IMG/VR virus record: IMGVR_UViG_3300045921_000730
Coordinates: 62,001 to 126,000 of that record
Length of the DNA stretch: 64,000 nt
Strand: one strand, 5' to 3'
Shown here: positions 1,109 to 59,782 of the stretch, piece after piece
Numbering within the stretch: position 1 is the stretch's first letter
Layout: the number at the start of each line of letters is the position of its first letter
Program-made: the position numbers and the translations under genes
Notes under the pieces: generated by a model
What the model saw: the letters and a program-made list of their open reading frames with translations, nothing else
The model's database searches: none
What the model was told of the DNA's origin: nothing

Positions 1109-1139
1109 TTGACTGAATACTTAAAATCGACTATAAATA
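1109..1139 (+). promoter_or_regulatory. Promoter for tmRNA: sigma70-like TTGACT-N17-TATAAA overlapping a T4-type late motif TATAAATA
   Basis: TTGACT at 1109-1114, TATAAATA at 1132-1139. Confidence 0.65.
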
Positions 1140-1144
1140 TATAT

Positions 1145-1412
1145 GTTAGTGAGTAATCACTGACAATGAGTGTATGAAGCAATCTGTAGACGGGCAAGAC
1201 ACGAGTTCGAATCTCGTCGCCTCCACAAATATTAACTCATGGGGGCGTTATGGAATCGATTGACGGGCGAAGGAAAGTGGACACTTCGAGAGACGACTGA
1301 CGTAATCAGCGTAAAACCTTAAATGCAAACGATGCATTTTATAATGAGGAATTCCGCCTAGCAGCGTAAACCTCAGGGGGAGCGTAGATTCCTTCTTACC
1401 CAACATCTACCG
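1145..1412 (+). ncRNA. ssrA: Circularly permuted (two-piece) tmRNA
   Basis: T-arm ACGAG-TTCGAAT-CTCGT (1201-1217) and acceptor 3' strand CGCCTCC-A (1218-1225) precede the 5' strand GGGGGCG (1241-1247), giving a G3:U70 pair; tag ORF 1325-1369 encodes ANDAFYNEEFRLAA*. Confidence 0.92.
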
Positions 1413-1446
1413 AAAGGACAGTCTTAAGACTGTCCTTTTTGTTTTT
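1413..1446 (+). terminator. Rho-independent terminator after tmRNA
   Basis: AAAGGACAGTC-TTAA-GACTGTCCTTT followed by a T-run. Confidence 0.85.
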
Positions 1447-27697: not shown

Positions 27698-29374
27698 ATG
27701 AGTTATATTTCAGCAATTACAAAAGAGAATGATGTTCTCGTGTGGGAACGCACAACCGAAGGTCGTGTTATAAAAGAATATACGGCTCCATATTACTTTT
27801 ATTATCAAGATCCGGCCGGTAAATATACAACAATATATAATGAAAAAGTATCAAAAATTCAACTCCAGACACGTCAAGAATATTACAAAGTCAAAAAAGA
27901 ATTTGAAGAAGACGGCATTCAATTATATGAAAGTGATATATCGCCAGATATTCGTGTTTTATCAAAACATTATTACAATAAACCCGCACCAAAACTTCAT
28001 ATTACTCTTTACGATATTGAGGTAGACTACAATCCTGACATTGGCTTTGCGTCACCTTCAAATCCATATGCACCAATTAATTCAATTGCAATTGTACATA
28101 ACTGGTCTAAAGACCTTGTTGTGCTAACAGTTCCTCCAACTCCTAATTGGACAAGCGAACAATTACTAAAAGAAGTGAATAACGCAGTACCTGAGGTTCC
28201 TGTCCCATCAAAATATAACACAAACATTATTATTTGTAAAAATGAGCATGAACTTTTATTAAACTTTCTTGCTGAAATTCAAGACTCCGACGTACTTGCA
28301 GGATGGAACAGCGATATATTTGATACACCATACATTGCAGCAAGAATTGCTATAGTTCTTGATAAACAAAAATTAAGTCTAACAACATCAGAAATTCCTG
28401 ATCCGTATGGTTCATCAAAAAAACAATTCAAATGGAAAGAAGATCCAAACACCTTAATGAACAAATGTCGTTTTCTAAAAAAACTCGACTTTGAACAATG
28501 CATGCCAAAATGGCGCATTGCTCTTAATGGTGAAAAAACAAAAGTATATGGCATTATGTTTGATACACAAGGCCGTATTATAACAGACTATATGGATCTA
28601 TACAAAAAATACGAACCGGGTGAGCGCTCTTCATATAAATTGGCTGCAATTGAACAAGAAGTTGATCTTAACCTTCCAAAGCTGGAATACAGTGGATCGT
28701 TACATAATCTTTATAGAAACAATTATCCTTTTTTTATTCGTTATAACATTCGAGATACTGAAATTCTGGACGGGTTCGAAGAAACGCTTGGTTATATTGA
28801 TCTAGCAAATCAGATGTATCATATTTCTACATGTTTATATAGCCACGTAACAGGTACATTAAAACTTGCTGAATTTGCAATTATTAATTATTGTCATCAT
28901 GTAATTAAAAAAGTTGTACCAAATACAAAATCACCCGAAATTGATAGACCAATTGCTGGAGCTCTTGTTTTATTACCACAGGTTGGTCTTCACGAATGGG
29001 TTGGATCAATTGATATCAATTCGCTATATCCAAGTTCGATTAGATCGATTAATATTTCACCAGAGACATTAAGAGGTCAGTTTATCGAAGAAGGAAAGGC
29101 CACAGAAGAAATTGCAAGTCAAACTCTTACACCTCTTACTTTGGTGTTAGAAACTGGTCAAAAACTTGTTAAGTCAGCAAGCGAATGGAACGAATGGTTA
29201 ACAAAAAAGAAATGGGCTATTAGTGGTTATGGAACAGTATTTGATCAAAATGAACAAGGTATTATTCCTGCGATTCTTACAGATTGGTATGCTACTCGTA
29301 AAAAATATCAAGCAAACAAGAAAGAAGCTGAAAAAAAGCTATCTACAATATTAAACAAGTATAAAAACGTTTAA
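27698..29374 (+). CDS. Family B DNA polymerase, N-terminal gene (exonuclease + motif A, ends in the fingers domain)
   Basis: YDIEV, GWNSDIFD, YNIRD, DINSLYPS. Confidence 0.92.
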   Translation: MSYISAITKENDVLVWERTTEGRVIKEYTAPYYFYYQDPAGKYTTIYNEKVSKIQLQTRQEYYKVKKEFEEDGIQLYESDISPDIRVLSKHYYNKPAPKLHITLYDIEVDYNPDIGFASPSNPYAPINSIAIVHNWSKDLVVLTVPPTPNWTSEQLLKEVNNAVPEVPVPSKYNTNIIICKNEHELLLNFLAEIQDSDVLAGWNSDIFDTPYIAARIAIVLDKQKLSLTTSEIPDPYGSSKKQFKWKEDPNTLMNKCRFLKKLDFEQCMPKWRIALNGEKTKVYGIMFDTQGRIITDYMDLYKKYEPGERSSYKLAAIEQEVDLNLPKLEYSGSLHNLYRNNYPFFIRYNIRDTEILDGFEETLGYIDLANQMYHISTCLYSHVTGTLKLAEFAIINYCHHVIKKVVPNTKSPEIDRPIAGALVLLPQVGLHEWVGSIDINSLYPSSIRSINISPETLRGQFIEEGKATEEIASQTLTPLTLVLETGQKLVKSASEWNEWLTKKKWAISGYGTVFDQNEQGIIPAILTDWYATRKKYQANKKEAEKKLSTILNKYKNV

Positions 29375-29407
29375 ACTGAATTTACAAAAATACTAGAATG
29401 TTCTCAT

Positions 29408-31024
29408 TTAAAGATTTGGATTCTCCCAAACTAATTTAATTTTCCCACAGTCCCAAATTCTGAAAAAACCACTATTTGCAAGCATAGCACGTTTTGAACC
29501 GTTGTTTAGTGATGATGCGGCAATTAATTGTTTTTTTGTAATAAATCTTCTATGTTTTCGTTGTTTGCCATCAGTCCACCACACAGCTGGCGGAGTTGTA
29601 TATAATTTTTTAAACCCAATGTGATCTTTCACTAATCCCGTAAACCATCTGCGATCAACAAAAGCGACAACCTTTTCACATTGTAATTGTTTTGTAGCAT
29701 ATTTAAACATCTTTGATCCAAGCCCCGGATTATTTTGTTTATTTGTGACAAAACGTTTTAATTCTAATTCGTTGGTTCCTTCACTAGAACTTTTGCCAAA
29801 TACCATAACACCGATTAACTCTCCCGAATTGGTATATGCTCCTATTCTATAACTGCCGGGTGATCCAGCACCAAGCAAATGGTGTTTATTTAAAAAATCT
29901 TGAGCTATATTCCATTCAATTTCTTTTATGGTTACGTTTCTAGCATAAACGCCTTTTGGTGACTTATTCAAAAGATGTCTCAATGTGTCTTTGCATTGTT
30001 GTTGCATGTTAAACCACTCATCTTCAAATATTTGAATTAAACGAATCCCTTTGCTTTCACACGCTTCGGTTTTTTTCAAATGATAACGAGCATCTTTCCC
30101 TGCAGCTTCACTGTGCCAGTATAGTCCATTATATTCTATAGCCAGATTATAATCTGGCAAAAATATGTCAAGCTCTATTGGATATATCATGGTTCTATTA
30201 TTGATTGTTATATTTTCAACGCCAAGCGATTTCAAAAATTCAACGATTTGATGTTGCCCAATTGAGCTGTAATATTTAATCGGTGTTATGCCATGTTTGC
30301 GTAAATAATTTATCACTGTAGTATCCCATATGCCTAACTCTTCAGCTATAATGGGGATGGATTTTTTGTTAACTATATGTTGTGTGTGCAACCAATTTTT
30401 ATCATTTAATAATGCAAGAGATTCATTAGGAATATGTTGTTGTGACCAATATTGTTTCCCATAACGGATTTCGTTAGTAATTTTTATTTTATTTTTAACT
30501 TCGTCTGTTTGTGATGGGTGTGGGACTCCATATTTTTCTAACGATCGTTGAATTTTAAGTTGTTGAACATATGGTAGCTGCGATGGATTGGTTACGTTCT
30601 GTAACGCAAAAGATTGTTTAATTTTTTCACGACCTAAAGATGAAACCAAAAAATTTGTGTGTCCATACTTTTCGCGGTTGGTATTTTGACGTTTGATCAA
30701 AATAGCCTTTTTATCAATGCAGGATAACGTTTTTTTCGTTTTGGATTTTGTAACCTCAGATAATCTTGCACAACGATTGCTGCAAAATTTGTTGTATTGT
30801 TTCTTTGCAACATTCCAATTAGTTTGCTTGCCGCATTCACACGTTGGAATAGATTTGATGTCATTTAACACAAGCCAAATAAGATTTCTAATGTTAATAA
30901 CGTTGATCCCAAGACTTTTGTAATGTATAATACCCATATTAAAGGTTTCTTGTTCTGTTAAAGGAATACGTTTTGGCATTTTATCTTTGTATTGCAAACA
31001 TAATTTCAGTAATTTATCGTTCAT
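29408..31024 (-). CDS. Free-standing putative homing endonuclease inserted antisense between polymerase halves
   Basis: CECG..FCSNRC, KYG repeats, ELDIFLP..AIEYNGLYWH, IFEDEW, IWDCG; TATAAATA on the minus strand at 31051-31058. Confidence 0.75.
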   Translation of the reverse strand: MNDKLLKLCLQYKDKMPKRIPLTEQETFNMGIIHYKSLGINVINIRNLIWLVLNDIKSIPTCECGKQTNWNVAKKQYNKFCSNRCARLSEVTKSKTKKTLSCIDKKAILIKRQNTNREKYGHTNFLVSSLGREKIKQSFALQNVTNPSQLPYVQQLKIQRSLEKYGVPHPSQTDEVKNKIKITNEIRYGKQYWSQQHIPNESLALLNDKNWLHTQHIVNKKSIPIIAEELGIWDTTVINYLRKHGITPIKYYSSIGQHQIVEFLKSLGVENITINNRTMIYPIELDIFLPDYNLAIEYNGLYWHSEAAGKDARYHLKKTEACESKGIRLIQIFEDEWFNMQQQCKDTLRHLLNKSPKGVYARNVTIKEIEWNIAQDFLNKHHLLGAGSPGSYRIGAYTNSGELIGVMVFGKSSSEGTNELELKRFVTNKQNNPGLGSKMFKYATKQLQCEKVVAFVDRRWFTGLVKDHIGFKKLYTTPPAVWWTDGKQRKHRRFITKKQLIAASSLNNGSKRAMLANSGFFRIWDCGKIKLVWENPNL

Positions 31025-31080
31025 ATATAATTCCTTCGTGGGTGTATATATATTTATATTATAACATATGGGAGTAATAA

Positions 31081-31200
31081 ATGCAAGTTAGAGAAGGTAT
31101 AGAAATGTCTGATGAAGATGCAGCTTTATATGATAAACACAAAGCTGCAATTGAATATTATGACAGATTACAATATGTTTACAAAATTAAATTAAACTCT
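31081..31200 (+). CDS. DNA polymerase C-terminal gene, exon 1 (missing from the ORF track)
   Basis: GGAG SD; MQVREG...QYVYKIKLNS is the first half of motif B. Confidence 0.85.
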
Positions 31201-31420
31201 TGACATACAAGGAGCTCATATTAGGAATAATATGATGAAAACTGGGTGAATTCAGGAAAACCCCACGTGGGCAATCCTGAGCCAAGCACAGACTACAGTT
31301 TGTGAAGGTGCAGAGACTACTGGAGAGGTAAAGTCCTCTTAATAACCAGACATAGCGCCCAGCAACCAGACCGGTTGATGATATAGTCCGACACCACCAG
31401 CAATGGTGGATTACAGTAAG
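31201..31420 (+). ncRNA. Group I intron (220 nt, no ORF) in polymerase motif B
   Basis: 5' exon ends in U and intron ends in G; core elements GAATTCAGGAAA, GCAATCCTGAGCCAAG, GCAGAGACT, GATATAGTCC; splicing restores KLNS|LYG in frame. Confidence 0.92.
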
Positions 31421-32485
31421 TTGTATGGTGCATTAACAAACCTCTATTTTCGTTTTTATGATTTACGAATGGGTGAGTCCACTACGGGCACGGGACGAAT
31501 GATTCTGCGGCACCAATGTCGTAAAGTAAGCGAAATACTTGATGGAAAATATGAAGTAGATTTTCCGCTGTACGAAAGCGTAAAAGAAACAGTTGAATCG
31601 GGCGTCGAACAAAAATATGCTCTTGAAGGCGAACTGTTCAAAGAACAATTTATGTCTGAAAGTGTGATATATGGCGATACCGACAGCACATACTTTAAAA
31701 CGCACGCAAAAAACAAAGAAGAAGCTGTAACAATTGCTGATAGTGTTGCCGAAAAAGTAAATTCTTCTTATAAAGAATTTATGCAAAAAACATTCCTGTG
31801 TAATTCCGGCTTTGATGACATCATTAAGTGTGGTCGCGAAATTGTAAGCGATCGAGGTATATTTGTTGATAAGAAACGCTATATCCTTCACATCGTTGAT
31901 AAAGAAGGAAAAGCAACTGACAGTATGAAGGTAATGGGTCTTGACACAAAGAAAACAACACTTCCAAAAGAAGTGACAGAAAAATTAAATAATTTTATAG
32001 AACTATACTTGAAAGGCATGTCTTGGGATGAAATTGCTGATAAAATTGTTGCTTACAAAGATGAACTAAGGAATACAAACGATCTTATGATTATTGGTTT
32101 ACCAAAAGGTGTTCAAAAAGTAGAAGAATATACATCCGACTTTCAAAATTACGGAGACAAAGCAAGATTACCAGGACACGTTGCAGCTGCTATTCATTAT
32201 AATCAATGTCTTAAAGCGTTTAACGATAAAGAAAGCGTGCCAATTATTTCTGGAATGAAAATTAAAGTTTTTTATTTAACAAAATCATATGGTAAATTTA
32301 AGAGTATTGCATTACCAACCGATATTGAAGTAATACCTGATTGGTTTACTAAAAATTTTACAGTTGATATTGAAGCTCACATAGAACGATTAGTTGATAA
32401 TCCTCTACAAAATATCTTGAAAGCAATTGGTAAAAAAACACCAACCAGACATGATATATTTGTTGATTCGGCATTTGAATTCTAA
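31421..32485 (+). CDS. DNA polymerase C-terminal gene, exon 2
   Basis: LYG, YGDTDS (motif C), KKRY, KVMGLD. Confidence 0.92.
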   Translation: MYGALTNLYFRFYDLRMGESTTGTGRMILRHQCRKVSEILDGKYEVDFPLYESVKETVESGVEQKYALEGELFKEQFMSESVIYGDTDSTYFKTHAKNKEEAVTIADSVAEKVNSSYKEFMQKTFLCNSGFDDIIKCGREIVSDRGIFVDKKRYILHIVDKEGKATDSMKVMGLDTKKTTLPKEVTEKLNNFIELYLKGMSWDEIADKIVAYKDELRNTNDLMIIGLPKGVQKVEEYTSDFQNYGDKARLPGHVAAAIHYNQCLKAFNDKESVPIISGMKIKVFYLTKSYGKFKSIALPTDIEVIPDWFTKNFTVDIEAHIERLVDNPLQNILKAIGKKTPTRHDIFVDSAFEF

Positions 32486-32486
32486 C

Positions 32487-33305
32487 ATGAAAAAGATTTT
32501 ATTTGTATTAACACTCACACTTTCCTTAAATGTATTTGCTCAACCAAAAAGTGTGCATGTTGTTGATCTTGATAATAACCATGTCGTTTACTCTGTAAAC
32601 AATGAACAAATTGTACCAATTGCGTCAATTACTAAATTAATGACAGCGCTTATTGTTGTTGAAGAAAACTTACCCCTCGATGAAGTAATAGAAATTACAA
32701 ATGATGATGTAATTGGTACTTATTTAAAAAATAAGCCTACATATTCACGTATGAATGTTGGTATGAAATTTACTCGCGAAGAATTATTACAACTTGCGCT
32801 TGTAAGTTCTCAAAATCGCGCTGCATACGCTCTTGCACGGACGTCGTTTGGTGAAGTTCCTTATTTTGTTGATAAAATGAATGAAAAAGCAAGACAATTA
32901 AACATGGAAAACACTTTCTTCGTGGAACCTACGGGTCTTAACCAGAAAAACGTTTCTACAGCAAAAGATTTAGTAATTCTATTGAGCTACATCAAAGAAA
33001 AATATCCAATAATTGGTGAAATTAGTGTTAAACCTTCGCTTCATTTTATGAACACGGAGTTTAATACAACAAATCGTTTTGTACATTCTGATAAATGGAA
33101 TGTTACCCTACAAAAAACCGGATTTATTAATCAAGCCGGCAAATGTGTTGCAATGTTGGCCAACATTGCAAACAAACAAATAGCTATAATTATTCTTGGT
33201 GCTACAAATAGTTCTGAACGCTTTACTATCGCCAATAATATTAAACACTATATTGAAATCGGACGTTTTCCTCAGTTTAAAAAACCTAAACGTCACAGAA
33301 GTTGA
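32487..33305 (+). CDS. Peptidase S11 D-Ala-D-Ala carboxy/endopeptidase (PBP7-like)
   Basis: Signal peptide; SITK, SQN, KTG motifs. Confidence 0.9.
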   Translation: MKKILFVLTLTLSLNVFAQPKSVHVVDLDNNHVVYSVNNEQIVPIASITKLMTALIVVEENLPLDEVIEITNDDVIGTYLKNKPTYSRMNVGMKFTREELLQLALVSSQNRAAYALARTSFGEVPYFVDKMNEKARQLNMENTFFVEPTGLNQKNVSTAKDLVILLSYIKEKYPIIGEISVKPSLHFMNTEFNTTNRFVHSDKWNVTLQKTGFINQAGKCVAMLANIANKQIAIIILGATNSSERFTIANNIKHYIEIGRFPQFKKPKRHRS

Positions 33306-56826: not shown

Positions 56827-57796
56827 TTTTATTCCTTACGATTTATTAAAATATTTATTAAATAACATTTTTAAAAAATGACACAAAAAACAAAACTTAC
56901 AGATAAAATGATAAAGGATTGGATCGCAACGGGGTTAAATTCAAAACTCGTAGCTCAACGACATAACATCAGCTACTATACATTCCTTCCGCTGATCAAA
57001 GATTATATTAATACCTTAACGATAGACAATCTGATACAACTTGCTGAAAATAAAAACATTGACTTTAAATTCATTTCGCAAACAACAGCGTTATACAAAC
57101 AAATTTATGACGAAACATCATTTTTAAAACCAGAAAGTTCAATACGACAACGGCTGTTTCATATCAAACACAAAATAACCAGTGCACCAAAATGTAAATG
57201 CTGCAACAATTTAACAAACTGGGATAATACTCTAAAAAATTATAGAACATATTGCAGCATCAAATGTCAGTCAAATGACCCAGATGTCATTCTATCAAAA
57301 AAACAAACAAACGTAAAAAACAGAGGCGTCGAATATCCTGCACAAGATAAAAATGTACGCGAAAAATATAAAAAAACAATGATTAATCGATATGGGATAT
57401 CTCACGTAAACAAAACAAATAAAACCGAATCAATTAATAACTTTGACCTATTACACGACTTATATTGGGTACAACATTTATCAACGTTTGATATTGCCGA
57501 ACGGTTCGGAGTCAGCCAATCTTACATAGCAAAACTACTTCAATTATATAATATTGAACCACACACAAAATCTTGCTTTGAACAACAAATTGTTAATTTT
57601 TTAAAACAAGATTTAAACATAGATGTAATCCTGAACACAAGAAAAATAATATATCCAAAAGAAATTGACATTTTTTTGCCCAATTACAACATTGCAATAG
57701 AATGCAATGGATTATTTTGGCACAGTGAAATAAGTGGCGGAAAAAGTAACAAATACCACATCGAAAAAACTATATTATGTCAGCAAAAAAATATTA

Positions 57797-59148: not shown

Positions 59149-59782
59149 TGTTGTTTCATATATTTGAAAGCGAATGGATAGAAAAACAACAAATTGTAAA
59201 ATCTAGATTAAAATCAGCGCTGGGGTTCAATAACAAAATATATGCAAGAAATTGCAAAATACAATCAATTACATCACAAGAAGCAGAATTGTTTTATAAT
59301 AAACACCACATCCAAGGTTCAACAAAAAATCAATTTAACTATGCACTAATCAATAACAACATGATCGTTGCTTGTATGAGTTTTAACAAACCACGTTTTA
59401 CAAAAAAATATGATATTGAACTTACGCGCTTTTGCACTTTATCAGATCATAACGTTGTCGGTGGAGCCTCTAAGCTGTTCAAACATTTTATCAACAAACA
59501 TCACAACATAAACACAATCATCAGTTATAGTGACAAACGTTGGTCGCAAGGTAATTTATACAAAACTTTAAACTTTTTGTACTCACATACGTCTTCACCT
59601 AACTATTGGTACTTCAAATGTCTACCACACTTATTCTCACGCATGCAATTTCAAAAACATAAACTGAAAACATTGTTTGAAAATTATAATGATCAATTAA
59701 CAGAATGGGAGAACATGAAAAATAACGGATATGATAGAATATGGGATTGCGGGAATGATGTGTGGGTATGGACGAGAAATGC

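What the first reader, a model, noticed from the sequence alone, without database searches (positions are those of the whole stretch)
27698..32485. DNA polymerase in three pieces: split gene, antisense endonuclease and group I intron
Seen: gene A stops at the fingers helix (KKLSTILNKYKNV*), followed by an antisense endonuclease. Gene B starts with a 40-codon exon missing from the ORF track, is interrupted in motif B (KLNS|LYG) by a 220-nt group I intron, and continues to YGDTDS. No intein motifs flank the A/B break, so the subunits presumably associate non-covalently. Established: fingers-domain splits occur in gp43 of some T4-like phages. The combination with an intron 120 nt into gene B is notable.
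Basis: partly seen in the sequence, partly recalled or inferred. Interest (0 to 1): 0.72.

Follow-up and report, generated by a model that had tools for sequence, protein, structure and literature searches.

The report
Split phage DNA polymerase with endonuclease and intron
A jumbo phage from hot-spring mats encodes its only DNA polymerase as two separate proteins, with a selfish endonuclease gene lying backwards in the gap and a self-splicing intron just downstream; the same three-part layout is already known from Aeromonas phage 25.

Summary

- **Gene A** (27698-29374, 558 aa) encodes the exonuclease domain, motif A and the first fingers helix of a family-B polymerase.
- **Endonuclease gene** (29408-31024, minus strand, 538 aa) is an intact Hef-type (EDxHD/Vsr-like) homing endonuclease.
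- **Gene B** starts at 31081 behind a GGGAG ribosome-binding site. After 40 codons it is cut inside motif B (KIKLNS|LYGAL) by a 220-nt group I intron (31201-31420; Rfam 85.8 bits against a cut-off of 50). It then runs on through YGDTDS to 32485.

The three coding pieces are colinear with the closest unsplit, intron-less homologue (about 70% identity).

The layout is not new. Aeromonas phage 25 gene 43 has the same order: 43A, free-standing endonuclease, 43B with a group I intron. Here the phage lineage, the endonuclease family and its orientation differ, and the intron sits 13 nt upstream of the phage 25 site.

Fourteen distinct split relatives break at the same fingers-tip point: seven with no endonuclease and no intron, two with an intron only, one with an endonuclease only and four with both. 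The split state is scattered over the polymerase tree.

A complex model supports non-covalent assembly through lengthened fingers helices. Splicing, endonuclease activity and its target remain untested.

The parts
27698..29374 (+). polB gene A (558 aa): N-terminal and 3'-5' exonuclease domains (DIEVD at 28013-28027), palm motif A (DINSLYPS at 29012-29035) and the first fingers helix. It ends ...NKYKNV* at the fingers tip.
   Evidence: ORF. Pfam and PHROG matches. Aligns to RB69 gp43 up to about residue 493 or beyond. Colinear with residues 1-544 of the unsplit P0002.
29408..31024 (-). Free-standing Hef-type (EDxHD / Vsr-like) homing endonuclease gene, 538 aa, antisense to polB. It has an N-terminal Zn-finger-like region with DUF7487 repeats, an HTH, a Vsr-like nuclease core (ELD...LAIEYNGLYWHS) and a C-terminal Mom-like domain.
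   Evidence: PHROG 3339 at 6e-101; Pfam DUF7487, MTES_1575, Mom. The only PDB match is the I-Bth0305I nuclease domain 3R3P. The nuclease motif is intact and shared with paralogues. 33% identical to the PA5oct 'Hef-like homing endonuclease' that also splits a polB. 6 synonymous: 3 nonsynonymous differences against a strain variant.
31025..31080 (.). 56-nt AT-rich spacer between the divergent starts of the endonuclease gene and gene B. It holds both ribosome-binding sites (GGGAG at 31070-31074 for B; AAGGA on the minus strand for the endonuclease). Any promoters here are inferred, not shown.
   Evidence: Sequence. No above-background promoter or terminator signal and no stable hairpin.
31081..31200 (+). 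Gene B exon 1 (40 codons): MQVREGIEMSDEDAALYDKHKAAIEYYDRLQYVYKIKLNS. This is the start of the second fingers helix and the first half of motif B.
   Evidence: ORF. The same 40-residue head is conserved in 9 other split relatives. Its last 15 residues are identical to P0002 residues 552-566.
31201..31420 (+). ORF-less group I intron (220 nt, IA-like with an extra hairpin between P7 and P3'). An in-frame TGA is its first codon. The P9 loop is a GNRA tetraloop.
   Evidence: Rfam RF00028 at 85.8 bits. Homologous introns sit at the same site in L014, L015, L091, L100, L103 and L104. 20 of 59 predicted pairs show compensatory changes among 4 sequences. All five intron-bearing alleles whose junction was read (window, L014, L015, L091, L100) have the TCT codon that P1 needs.
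31421..32485 (+). Gene B exon 2 (354 codons plus stop): second half of motif B (LYGALTN), motif C (YGDTDS at 31670-31687), rest of the palm and the thumb. The automatic ORF start at 31403 lies inside intron stem P9 and is an artefact.
   Evidence: Pfam and PHROG matches. Aligns to RB69 residues 566-606 and 700-858. 71% identical to P0002 residues 567-920. 17 synonymous (including the TAA>TAG stop-codon change at 32485): 1 nonsynonymous differences against a strain variant.

Best explanation
This is the phage's only recognisable replicative polymerase. It is a family-B enzyme encoded as two cistrons broken at the tip of the fingers hairpin, and it carries two selfish elements.

Subunit A carries the exonuclease domain and catalytic motif A. 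Subunit B carries motifs B and C and the thumb. The active site therefore exists only in the A-B heterodimer.

B is made from a pre-mRNA whose 220-nt group I intron splices itself out and joins KIKLNS to LYGAL.

A and B are not joined covalently. They associate as the two halves of one fold. Split forms also carry about 30 extra residues at the break. These are modelled as lengthening the two antiparallel fingers helices into a longer helical pair.

The antisense ORF in the gap is an intact Hef-type (EDxHD/Vsr-like) homing endonuclease. Most likely it cuts polB alleles of co-infecting relatives that lack the insertions, and repair from this genome then copies the endonuclease gene, the split cassette and the nearby intron together. 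That would be trans or 'collaborative' homing, as proposed for Aeromonas phage 25 gene 43 and the cyanophage psbA intron.

Shown here: the anatomy, homology, colinearity, intron structure with covariation, recurrence in relatives, and purifying selection on exon 2.

Inferred: splicing in vivo, heterodimer activity, endonuclease activity and its target, and how gene B is transcribed.
For: - Anatomy and domain content.
- Colinearity with the unsplit, intron-less P0002/L013: A 1-547, exon 1 26-40 and exon 2 1-354 map to residues 1-544, 552-566 and 567-920.
- No other PolB or PolA in the 244-kb record.
- Separate cistrons: split-only relatives have 2-11 nt spacers with a stop, a ribosome-binding site and an ATG, and a conserved B head M(P/Q)(I/V)R(E)G..S.EDA.
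- Intron: Rfam 85.8 bits; U.G at the 5' splice site; conserved terminal G; 20 of 59 pairs compensatory; same-site introns in 6 relatives; exon codon TCT fixed in the five intron-bearing alleles read.
- Assembly: ipSAE 0.78 against a best control of 0.37, a mark reached by 58/80 solved complexes and 2/110 mismatched pairs. The interface includes A residues 523-555 at a helical spacing and exon-1 residues 4-40.
- Endonuclease: whole-length PHROG match, intact Vsr-like motif, sole PDB match 3R3P, and Hef-type enzymes are placed in the EDxHD family by PMC3239194.
- Selection between two strains: exon 2 has 17 synonymous: 1 nonsynonymous differences, the endonuclease 6: 3, and the one intron change keeps a GNRA loop.
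- Mobility: the split state needs at least 5 changes on the N-terminal tree and 8 on the C-terminal tree. One clade of split forms is rejected (AU p = 5e-8). Both halves of the window's enzyme group with unsplit, short-tip enzymes (98% support).
- Introns are 80-87% identical among loci whose flanking exons are 56-72% identical.
- Of 15 split loci, 5 of 6 with an endonuclease have the intron, against 2 of 9 without (Fisher p = 0.04, not corrected for relatedness).
- An intron-less, short-tip allele of a relative occurs in the same hot-spring community.
- Precedent: phage 25.
Against: - No RNA data: no public RNA run holds this sequence, so splicing and transcript structure are untested.
- The complex score may reflect the model's memory of contiguous PolB structures, and it was run on three chains with my own alignments.
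- The endonuclease target is unknown.
- L092 has a Hef-type endonuclease at the same place without an intron, and L091 and L104 have the intron without an endonuclease, so the two elements are separable.
- The endonuclease-intron association is not significant once the three loci sharing one endonuclease type are collapsed (p = 0.22).
- Higher intron identity could reflect ribozyme constraint rather than recent transfer.
- Gene A shows 5 nonsynonymous: 1 synonymous differences between strains. The numbers are small and three of the changes cluster in a variable loop.
- No promoter for gene B could be identified.
Confidence: 0.75

Rival explanations
1. The endonuclease recognises the uninterrupted fingers-tip sequence of unsplit polB alleles, which is its own insertion point, and not the motif-B site. 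The intron is then an independent passenger that spreads only by co-conversion or on its own.
For: - L092 carries a Hef-type endonuclease in the same gap without any intron.
- L091 and L104 carry the intron without an endonuclease.
- Three unrelated endonuclease types occupy the same gap.
- The split itself removes the short-tip sequence, which would protect the host allele.
Against: - The short tip is the least conserved part of the gene, making it a poor homing target. Motif B DNA is highly conserved.
- In phage 25 the free-standing endonuclease is reported to cut intron-less 43B at the intron site.
Confidence: 0.3
2. The arrangement is a frozen accident. The endonuclease is no longer active or has taken on another role, nothing is mobile any more, and the phage simply tolerates a split, intron-bearing polymerase gene.
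For: - No direct evidence of activity.
- Nine paralogues in one genome might include decayed copies: two partial hits lie at window 57286-57795 and 59151-59774.
- The antisense position exposes the gene to read-through from gene A.
Against: - The ORF is full length against its family profile, with the nuclease motif intact.
- 6 synonymous: 3 nonsynonymous differences between strains.
- The same antisense junction is kept in a relative about 87% identical.
- The scattered phylogenetic distribution of the cassette requires repeated transfer.
Confidence: 0.15
3. A and B are joined after transcription or translation, by trans-splicing, one very large intron spanning the endonuclease gene, ribosomal bypassing or protein splicing, so that a single-chain polymerase is made.
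For: The pieces are colinear and close together. T4 gene 60 shows that phage ribosomes can bypass gaps.
Against: - No second intron or other RNA family was found in 29200-31600 even at E <= 1.
- No intein or Hint domains.
- Every split relative has a stop, a ribosome-binding site and a conserved Met-initiated head, including those with spacers of only 2-11 nt.
- Phage 25 gp43A and gp43B are reported to co-purify as separate chains with polymerase activity (PMC2988022).
Confidence: 0.03
4. The gene is a decaying pseudogene, and replication relies on a host polymerase or on one encoded in the missing 28% of the genome.
For: The record is estimated to be only 72% complete. Gene A shows 5 nonsynonymous: 1 synonymous differences between strains.
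Against: - All three coding pieces are open over 952 codons, with every catalytic motif present.
- Exon 2 shows 17 synonymous: 1 nonsynonymous differences.
- No other PolA or PolB in 244 kb.
- The same split is kept in many large phage genomes.
Confidence: 0.02

Closest known systems
Aeromonas phage 25 gene 43 (43A / seg43(25) endonuclease / 43B with group IA2 intron), and the split-only gene 43 of phage 44RR (Petrov, Ratnayaka & Karam 2010, J Mol Biol 395:457; summarised in PMC2988022)
   Same: - Family-B replicative polymerase broken at the fingers into two cistrons.
- A free-standing homing endonuclease gene lies in the gap.
- An ORF-less group I intron lies inside motif B, a short first exon into the B cistron.
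- Sister genomes have the split alone.
- The subunits are reported to co-purify and to be active.

   Different: - The phage lineage is unrelated: a jumbo phage near XacN1 with about 40% identity, against a T4-like phage.
- The endonuclease is Hef-type EDxHD/Vsr-like and 538 aa, not a GIY-YIG Seg-like enzyme of 267 aa.
- It lies on the opposite strand; in phage 25 it is co-oriented with gene 43.
- The intron is inserted after the Ser codon of KxxxNS, 13 nt upstream of the phage 25 site, which lies after LYGA plus one base by my reading.
- The intron is 220 nt, against about 330 nt.
Collaborative or trans homing: cyanophage S-PM2 psbA intron with the neighbouring free-standing F-CphI, and T4 mobE with the nrdB intron (Zeng et al. 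2009; Bonocora & Shub 2009; Wilson & Edgell 2009, PMC2790892)
   Same: An ORF-less group I intron sits within a few hundred bases of a free-standing endonuclease gene. The intron core is 75% identical over 146 nt to the S-PM2 psbA intron, one of the closest DNA matches among isolated phages.
   Different: The host gene is different. Here the endonuclease also sits in a gene split. Cleavage of intron-less alleles was shown there and not here.
Pseudomonas jumbo phage PA5oct polB with a 'Hef-like homing endonuclease' between two DNA polymerase CDSs
   Same: A jumbo-phage family-B polymerase in two CDSs with a homologous Hef-type endonuclease between them (33% identity over 285 aa).
   Different: In PA5oct the break is further downstream, near motif C (P0002 residues about 655-664). 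The endonuclease is on the sense strand, and Rfam finds no intron.
I-Bth0305I / EDxHD homing endonuclease family (Taylor et al. 2011, PMC3239194; Dassa et al. 2009 'fractured genes', PMC2677866)
   Same: A Vsr-like nuclease core with the conserved acidic, Asn and His residues. Hef-type phage enzymes are placed in this family by those authors. Members of the family are known to fracture replication genes.
   Different: I-Bth0305I is encoded inside an intron and is 266 aa. The window's enzyme is free-standing and twice as long, with extra N-terminal repeats and a C-terminal Mom-like domain. The fractured genes of Dassa et al. are held together by split inteins, which are absent here.

Membership tests
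Group I intron (Rfam RF00028) | Covariance-model score above the curated threshold | tested here: met
   85.8 bits against a gathering score of 50, E 1.8e-20, full model 1-253.
Group I intron (Rfam RF00028) | P1 helix formed by the 5' exon end and an internal guide sequence, with a U.G pair at the splice site, and a terminal G at the 3' end | tested here: met
   CUCU(31197-31200) pairs with GGAG, with U31200.G. G31420 precedes exon 2 and is conserved in 4 aligned introns. The five intron-bearing alleles whose junction was read keep the TCT codon.
Group I intron (Rfam RF00028) | Conserved core helices supported by compensatory changes | tested here: met
   59 predicted pairs, 20 with both-side changes that keep pairing, among only 4 sequences (P2, P6a, P8, P9 and others).
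Group I intron (Rfam RF00028) | Removal restores an uninterrupted reading frame colinear with intron-less homologues | tested here: met
   Exon 1 and exon 2 abut at residues 566/567 of the unsplit P0002 and at RB69 S565/L566.
Group I intron (Rfam RF00028) | Self-splicing with a guanosine cofactor | not testable with these tools
   No RNA run holds the sequence. Needs in-vitro transcription and splicing, or RT-PCR.
Split PolB of the gp43A/gp43B type (Aeromonas phages 44RR and 25) | Two adjacent cistrons colinear with the N- and C-terminal parts of one family-B polymerase, broken in the fingers domain | tested here: met
   A maps to P0002 1-544 and B to 552-920. A ends after the helix aligned to RB69 about 455-493, and exon 2 starts at RB69 566. 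Phage 25 43A ends at a comparable distance after motif A.
Split PolB of the gp43A/gp43B type (Aeromonas phages 44RR and 25) | No intein; independent translation start for B | tested here: met
   No intein or Hint Pfam hits. GGGAG and ATG at 31070-31083. A conserved Met-initiated head in 10 split loci.
Split PolB of the gp43A/gp43B type (Aeromonas phages 44RR and 25) | Subunits form a complex with polymerase activity | tested here: inconclusive
   The model only supports binding: ipSAE 0.78 against a best control of 0.37, a mark reached by 58/80 solved complexes and 2/110 mismatched pairs.
Split PolB of the gp43A/gp43B type (Aeromonas phages 44RR and 25) | Common descent with the Aeromonas phage split | tested here: not met
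   The polymerases are only distantly related, with T4-like hits far below the XacN1-like ones. The tails at the break are unrelated in sequence, and the intron site differs by 13 nt. This is an analogous case, not an orthologous one.
EDxHD / Hef-type homing endonucleases | Vsr-like nuclease core with the conserved catalytic Glu/Asp...Asn...His...Asp residues | tested here: met
   ELD...LAIEYNGLYWHS...D is conserved with paralogues and with the PA5oct and L092 enzymes. The sole PDB hit is 3R3P, E 0.013. Pfam MTES_1575 scores below its cut-off (25.3 against 38.2 bits), so the fold assignment rests on motif and family context.
EDxHD / Hef-type homing endonucleases | Whole-length homology to phage enzymes annotated as Hef-like homing endonucleases | tested here: met
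   PHROG 3339 at 6e-101 over residues 43-534. 419 phage records carry homologues, including F-LimX and PA5oct 'Hef-like'.
EDxHD / Hef-type homing endonucleases | Site-specific double-strand cleavage of alleles that lack the gene, and biased inheritance | not testable with these tools
   Needs purified protein and mixed infections.

The most novel reading that the evidence does not exclude
The lengthened, broken fingers tip (A tail ...ILxKYK-stop plus B head M-P-I-R-E-G-I-E-x-S-x-E-D-A...) may itself be a laterally transferred cassette. On this reading it has replaced the ordinary 17-residue tip of jumbo-phage PolB at least five times and serves as a landing pad for varied cargo: three unrelated endonuclease types in either orientation, a pair of non-endonuclease ORFs, and an intron 120 nt away. 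The extra helical turns would be the adaptation that lets the two halves hold together. This would be a modular, self-propagating 'gene-splitting' element, rather than a one-off accident as in the Aeromonas phages.
Probability: 0.4. Interest if true: 0.55.

Novelty: new member of a known kind. Interest (0 to 1): 0.4.

Why it matters
It shows that the three-element architecture first described in one T4-like Aeromonas phage is not a curiosity. An essential polymerase split at the fingers, with a free-standing endonuclease in the gap and an ORF-less intron in motif B, recurs in an unrelated group of environmental jumbo phages, with interchangeable endonucleases.

The set of natural intermediates found here forms a ready-made series for two tests. 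One is whether free-standing endonucleases mobilise neighbouring introns and thereby give rise to composite mobile introns. The other is how an essential enzyme tolerates being cut in two. The intermediates are:
- unsplit;
- split only;
- split with intron;
- split with endonuclease;
- split with both.

For annotation, it warns that automated gene calls miss the 40-codon exon and place a false start inside the intron.

Tried and rejected
- **Phage database search:** megablast of the locus against 50,697 phage records gave no match.
- **Close relatives in IMG/VR:** a single-sequence search for relatives of exon 2 found none. An alignment query was needed.
- **Second intron or other RNA element between A and B:** a permissive Rfam scan of 29200-31600 found nothing. 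There is no other group I intron in the whole 244-kb record.
- **Promoters and terminators:** sigma-70-like and terminator-like sites are at or below shuffle expectation. 12-mers of the 56-nt spacer are not a recurrent genome motif. There are no stable hairpins at the endonuclease or B 5' ends, or at the A-stop/endonuclease-stop junction. How B and the endonuclease are transcribed stays open.
- **RNA evidence for splicing:** no RNA run holds the sequence. Only DNA runs from hot-spring and microbial-mat metagenomes do. I used the single read-laying run on DNA runs for population variation instead.
- **L091 correction:** I first read L091 as an unsplit gene with an intron. The sequence showed two in-frame stops that tblastn had read through, so it is split.
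- **Co-conversion tract:** sliding identity shows only a weak local shift towards split relatives around residues 541-580, in a region that is conserved anyway. I do not count it as evidence.
- **Endonuclease-intron association:** Fisher p = 0.04 on raw loci and 0.22 after collapsing related endonuclease types. I treat it as suggestive only.

Full report
**Source.** The window is bases 62001-126000 of a 244-kb IMG/VR virus record, estimated 72% complete. Public runs that hold the sequence are DNA runs from hot-spring and microbial-mat metagenomes. The polymerase is closest to those of jumbo phages: Xanthomonas XacN1 at 40% identity, Xoo-sp13, Stenotrophomonas CM1, Ralstonia RsoM2USA and Pseudomonas PA5oct. 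Megablast finds nothing similar among isolated phages.

**Anatomy: gene A and the endonuclease.**
- The ORF at 27698-29374 (558 aa) ends ...KKLSTILNKYKNV*.
- It carries the family-B exonuclease domain and the first third of the polymerase domain (Pfam). It matches PHROG 'DNA polymerase' families at 1e-98, including PHROG 2062, a 502-position family that matches only this N-terminal part.
- Against RB69 gp43 it aligns through motif A (DINSLYPS) and into the first fingers helix, RB69 about 455-493.
- On the opposite strand, 29408-31024 encodes a 538-aa protein that matches PHROG 3339 'homing endonuclease' at 6e-101 over its whole length.

**Anatomy: gene B.**
- A 40-codon ORF (31081-31200) follows a GGGAG ribosome-binding site and ends ...YVYKIKLNS, with TGA as the next codon.
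- Rfam places a group I intron at 31189-31410 (85.8 bits, threshold 50).
- The frame resumes at 31421 with LYGALTNLYFRFYDLR, which aligns to RB69 L566 onwards. The intron therefore lies between the Ser and Leu of motif B (KxxxNSxYG).
- YGDTDS (motif C) is at 31670-31687.
- The automatic ORF start at 31403 lies inside intron stem P9 and is an artefact.
- Pfam sees no intein or Hint domain. A permissive Rfam scan finds nothing else between A and B.

**Colinearity.** The closest homologue in a 5.8-billion-protein collection, P0002 (920 aa, 69% identical), is unsplit. The window's pieces map on it in order: A 1-547 to residues 1-544, exon 1 26-40 to 552-566 (15 of 15 identical), and exon 2 1-354 to 567-920. 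The split form carries about 30 residues at the break that P0002 lacks, namely the A tail and the first 25 residues of B.

**The intron is real.**
- Homologous introns of 220-222 nt sit at exactly the same codon boundary in L014, L015, L091, L100, L103 and L104.
- In a four-sequence alignment, RNAalifold predicts 59 pairs, of which 20 show compensatory changes (P2, P6a, P8, P9). P1 pairs CUCU with GGAG, with U31200.G at the splice site, and the terminal G is conserved.
- All five intron-bearing alleles whose junction was read (the window, L014, L015, L091 and L100) use Ser codon TCT at the 5' splice site, which P1 needs. Intron-less alleles use all six Ser codons.
- The one difference in the intron between two strains turns the P9 loop from GCAA to GUAA, which is still a GNRA tetraloop.
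- Among isolated phages, one of the closest DNA matches to the intron core is the S-PM2 psbA intron (75% over 146 nt).

**The endonuclease.**
- It has nine paralogues in the same genome.
- It is 33% identical to the PA5oct 'Hef-like homing endonuclease', which also lies between two polB CDSs. It is 31% identical to the endonuclease in the same gap of L092.
- Its only PDB match is the nuclease domain of I-Bth0305I (3R3P). Taylor et al. place Hef-type phage enzymes in that EDxHD/Vsr-like family (PMC3239194).
- The motif ELD...LAIEYNGLYWHS is intact.

**What relatives show.** Sixteen distinct polB loci of relatives were characterised in detail: 15 break at the fingers tip (counting the window) and one is an unsplit long-tip form. 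They came from 80 IMG/VR loci found with an alignment query plus contigs fetched for individual proteins. Their states are as follows:

| State at the fingers tip | Loci |
|---|---|
| Unsplit, with a short 17-residue tip | most loci |
| Unsplit, with a long tip | L061 |
| Split only, spacers of 2-190 nt | L017, L076, L099, L101, L105, L106 |
| Split plus intron | L091, L104 |
| Split plus sense-strand Hef-type endonuclease, no intron | L092 |
| Split plus two antisense ORFs of other kinds | L078 |
| Split plus sense-strand 305-aa HTH-DUF559 endonuclease plus intron | L014, L015, L103 |
| Split plus a 494-aa endonuclease of a third type plus intron | L100 |
| Split plus antisense Hef-type endonuclease plus intron | the window |

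All split forms share the same A end (...ILxKYK) and the same B head, so the broken tip is homologous among them.

On a tree of the N-terminal 525 residues the split state needs five changes, and a single clade of split forms is rejected (AU p = 5e-8). This group was defined by the trait, but the tree had been seen first. On the C-terminal tree it needs eight changes. In both trees the window groups with unsplit short-tip enzymes (98% support). The cassette has therefore moved between polymerase lineages by recombination, which is the kind of spread that endonuclease-driven gene conversion would produce.

Introns are 80-87% identical among loci whose flanking exons are only 56-72% identical. 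That fits recent spread but also fits ribozyme constraint.

**Population data.**
- A second strain (36 differences in 5 kb) has the same architecture.
- A relative about 87% identical keeps the A-stop/antisense-endonuclease junction.
- One contig in a hot-spring run matches exon 1 and then runs straight into LYGAL-coding sequence. It is preceded by a short-tip sequence. It is thus an intron-less, unsplit allele present in the same community.
- Differences between the two strains are 17 synonymous: 1 nonsynonymous in exon 2 (the synonymous count includes a TAA>TAG change in the stop codon), 6: 3 in the endonuclease, and 1: 5 in gene A. The gene A numbers are small, and three of the changes lie at codons 502-508.
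- The record holds no other PolB or PolA.

**Assembly.** A three-chain model (A, the exon-1 peptide and the exon-2 part, each with its own alignment) scored ipSAE 0.78 against a best control of 0.37. That mark was reached by 58 of 80 solved complexes and 2 of 110 mismatched pairs. The tool warns that these counts hold only roughly here, and that a pass may reflect memory of solved PolB structures. The interface includes A residues 523-555 at a helical spacing and exon-1 residues 4-40. The extra residues at the break are therefore modelled as lengthening the two antiparallel fingers helices. Motif A lies on A, and motifs B and C lie on B, so catalysis needs both subunits.

**Comparison with what is known.** Aeromonas phage 25 has the gene order 43A, homing endonuclease, 43B 'split by group IA2 intron' (GenBank annotation; Rfam 64.2 bits). 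The review PMC2988022 reports that the split products co-purify with polymerase activity and links the case to collaborative homing. Four things differ here:
- the phage lineage;
- the endonuclease family (GIY-YIG Seg-like in phage 25);
- the orientation of the endonuclease gene;
- the intron site, which in phage 25 lies after LYGA plus one base, 13 nt downstream of the window's site (my reading).

**Verdict.** The case is a new member of a known kind in a new phage group. The recurrent, laterally distributed cassette is the most interesting by-product. Splicing, heterodimer activity, endonuclease activity and target, and transcription of gene B across an antisense gene remain to be tested.

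Noticed in passing
window 1118-1441 (+): The phage carries a tmRNA gene. Rfam matches beta_tmRNA at 107.7 bits and the permuted tmRNA model at 121.3 bits. The distant relative XacN1 is also known for a large tRNA and tmRNA complement; that point is from my own knowledge.
   Followed up: no
window 57286-57795 and 59151-59774 (+); also G000:C1 138873-140294, 144658-145545, 146811-147461, 157871-158986, 164365-165705, 236958-238376: The genome holds nine further paralogues of the Hef-type endonuclease. The two hits inside the window cover different halves of the protein about 1.3 kb apart and may be one endonuclease gene in pieces.
   Followed up: partly
L020, L021, L063, L066, L081, L083, L093 (about 1.1-kb in-frame inserts at P0002 residues 643-655); L101 5154-7451: Relatives' polB genes carry in-frame inserts at the YGDTDS motif, and one B subunit has a Pfam Intein_splicing hit. 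Inteins therefore use a third hot spot in the same gene.
   Followed up: partly
L039 about 3705 (polB codon 481): An in-frame stop replaces the conserved Trp of KWAISGYG in an otherwise intact polB. It could be a sequencing error, a pseudogene or stop-codon recoding.
   Followed up: no
L078 8813-10146 (-): In this relative the A/B gap holds two antisense ORFs (204 and 240 aa) with weak GNAT and nucleotidyltransferase hits instead of an endonuclease. The gap can therefore carry other cargo.
   Followed up: partly
C-termini of P0022, P0029, P0070, P0086, P0088, P0099, P0114, P0118: Many A subunits of split relatives end in long acidic tails with terminal aromatic residues (...DDSDMYDDYEG...DEEEFDEF...TGMDGLSHF). 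These resemble protein-docking tails. The window's A subunit lacks one.
   Followed up: no
window 31153-31201, run X7: A metagenome contig matches exon 1 and continues directly into LYGAL-coding sequence, preceded by a short-tip sequence. It is an intron-less, unsplit allele of a relative in the same hot-spring community, and so a potential homing recipient.
   Followed up: partly
window 29202-29219 (gene A codons 502-508): Between two strains, gene A has 5 nonsynonymous: 1 synonymous differences, three of them within seven codons just before the conserved WAISGYG. Exon 2 has 1: 17.
   Followed up: no
window 32427-33305 (+): A D-Ala-D-Ala carboxypeptidase (Peptidase_S11, 7.7e-50) follows polB directly and is syntenic in relatives. 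The listed TTG start overlaps the end of polB, and the real start is probably the Met of MKKILFVLTL.
   Followed up: no
window 29411-29930 (endonuclease residues about 364-538): The C-terminal third of the Hef-type endonuclease gives weak matches to the Mom DNA-modification family (Pfam 7.2e-5, below the cut-off; PHROG 1384 at 1.8e-8).
   Followed up: no
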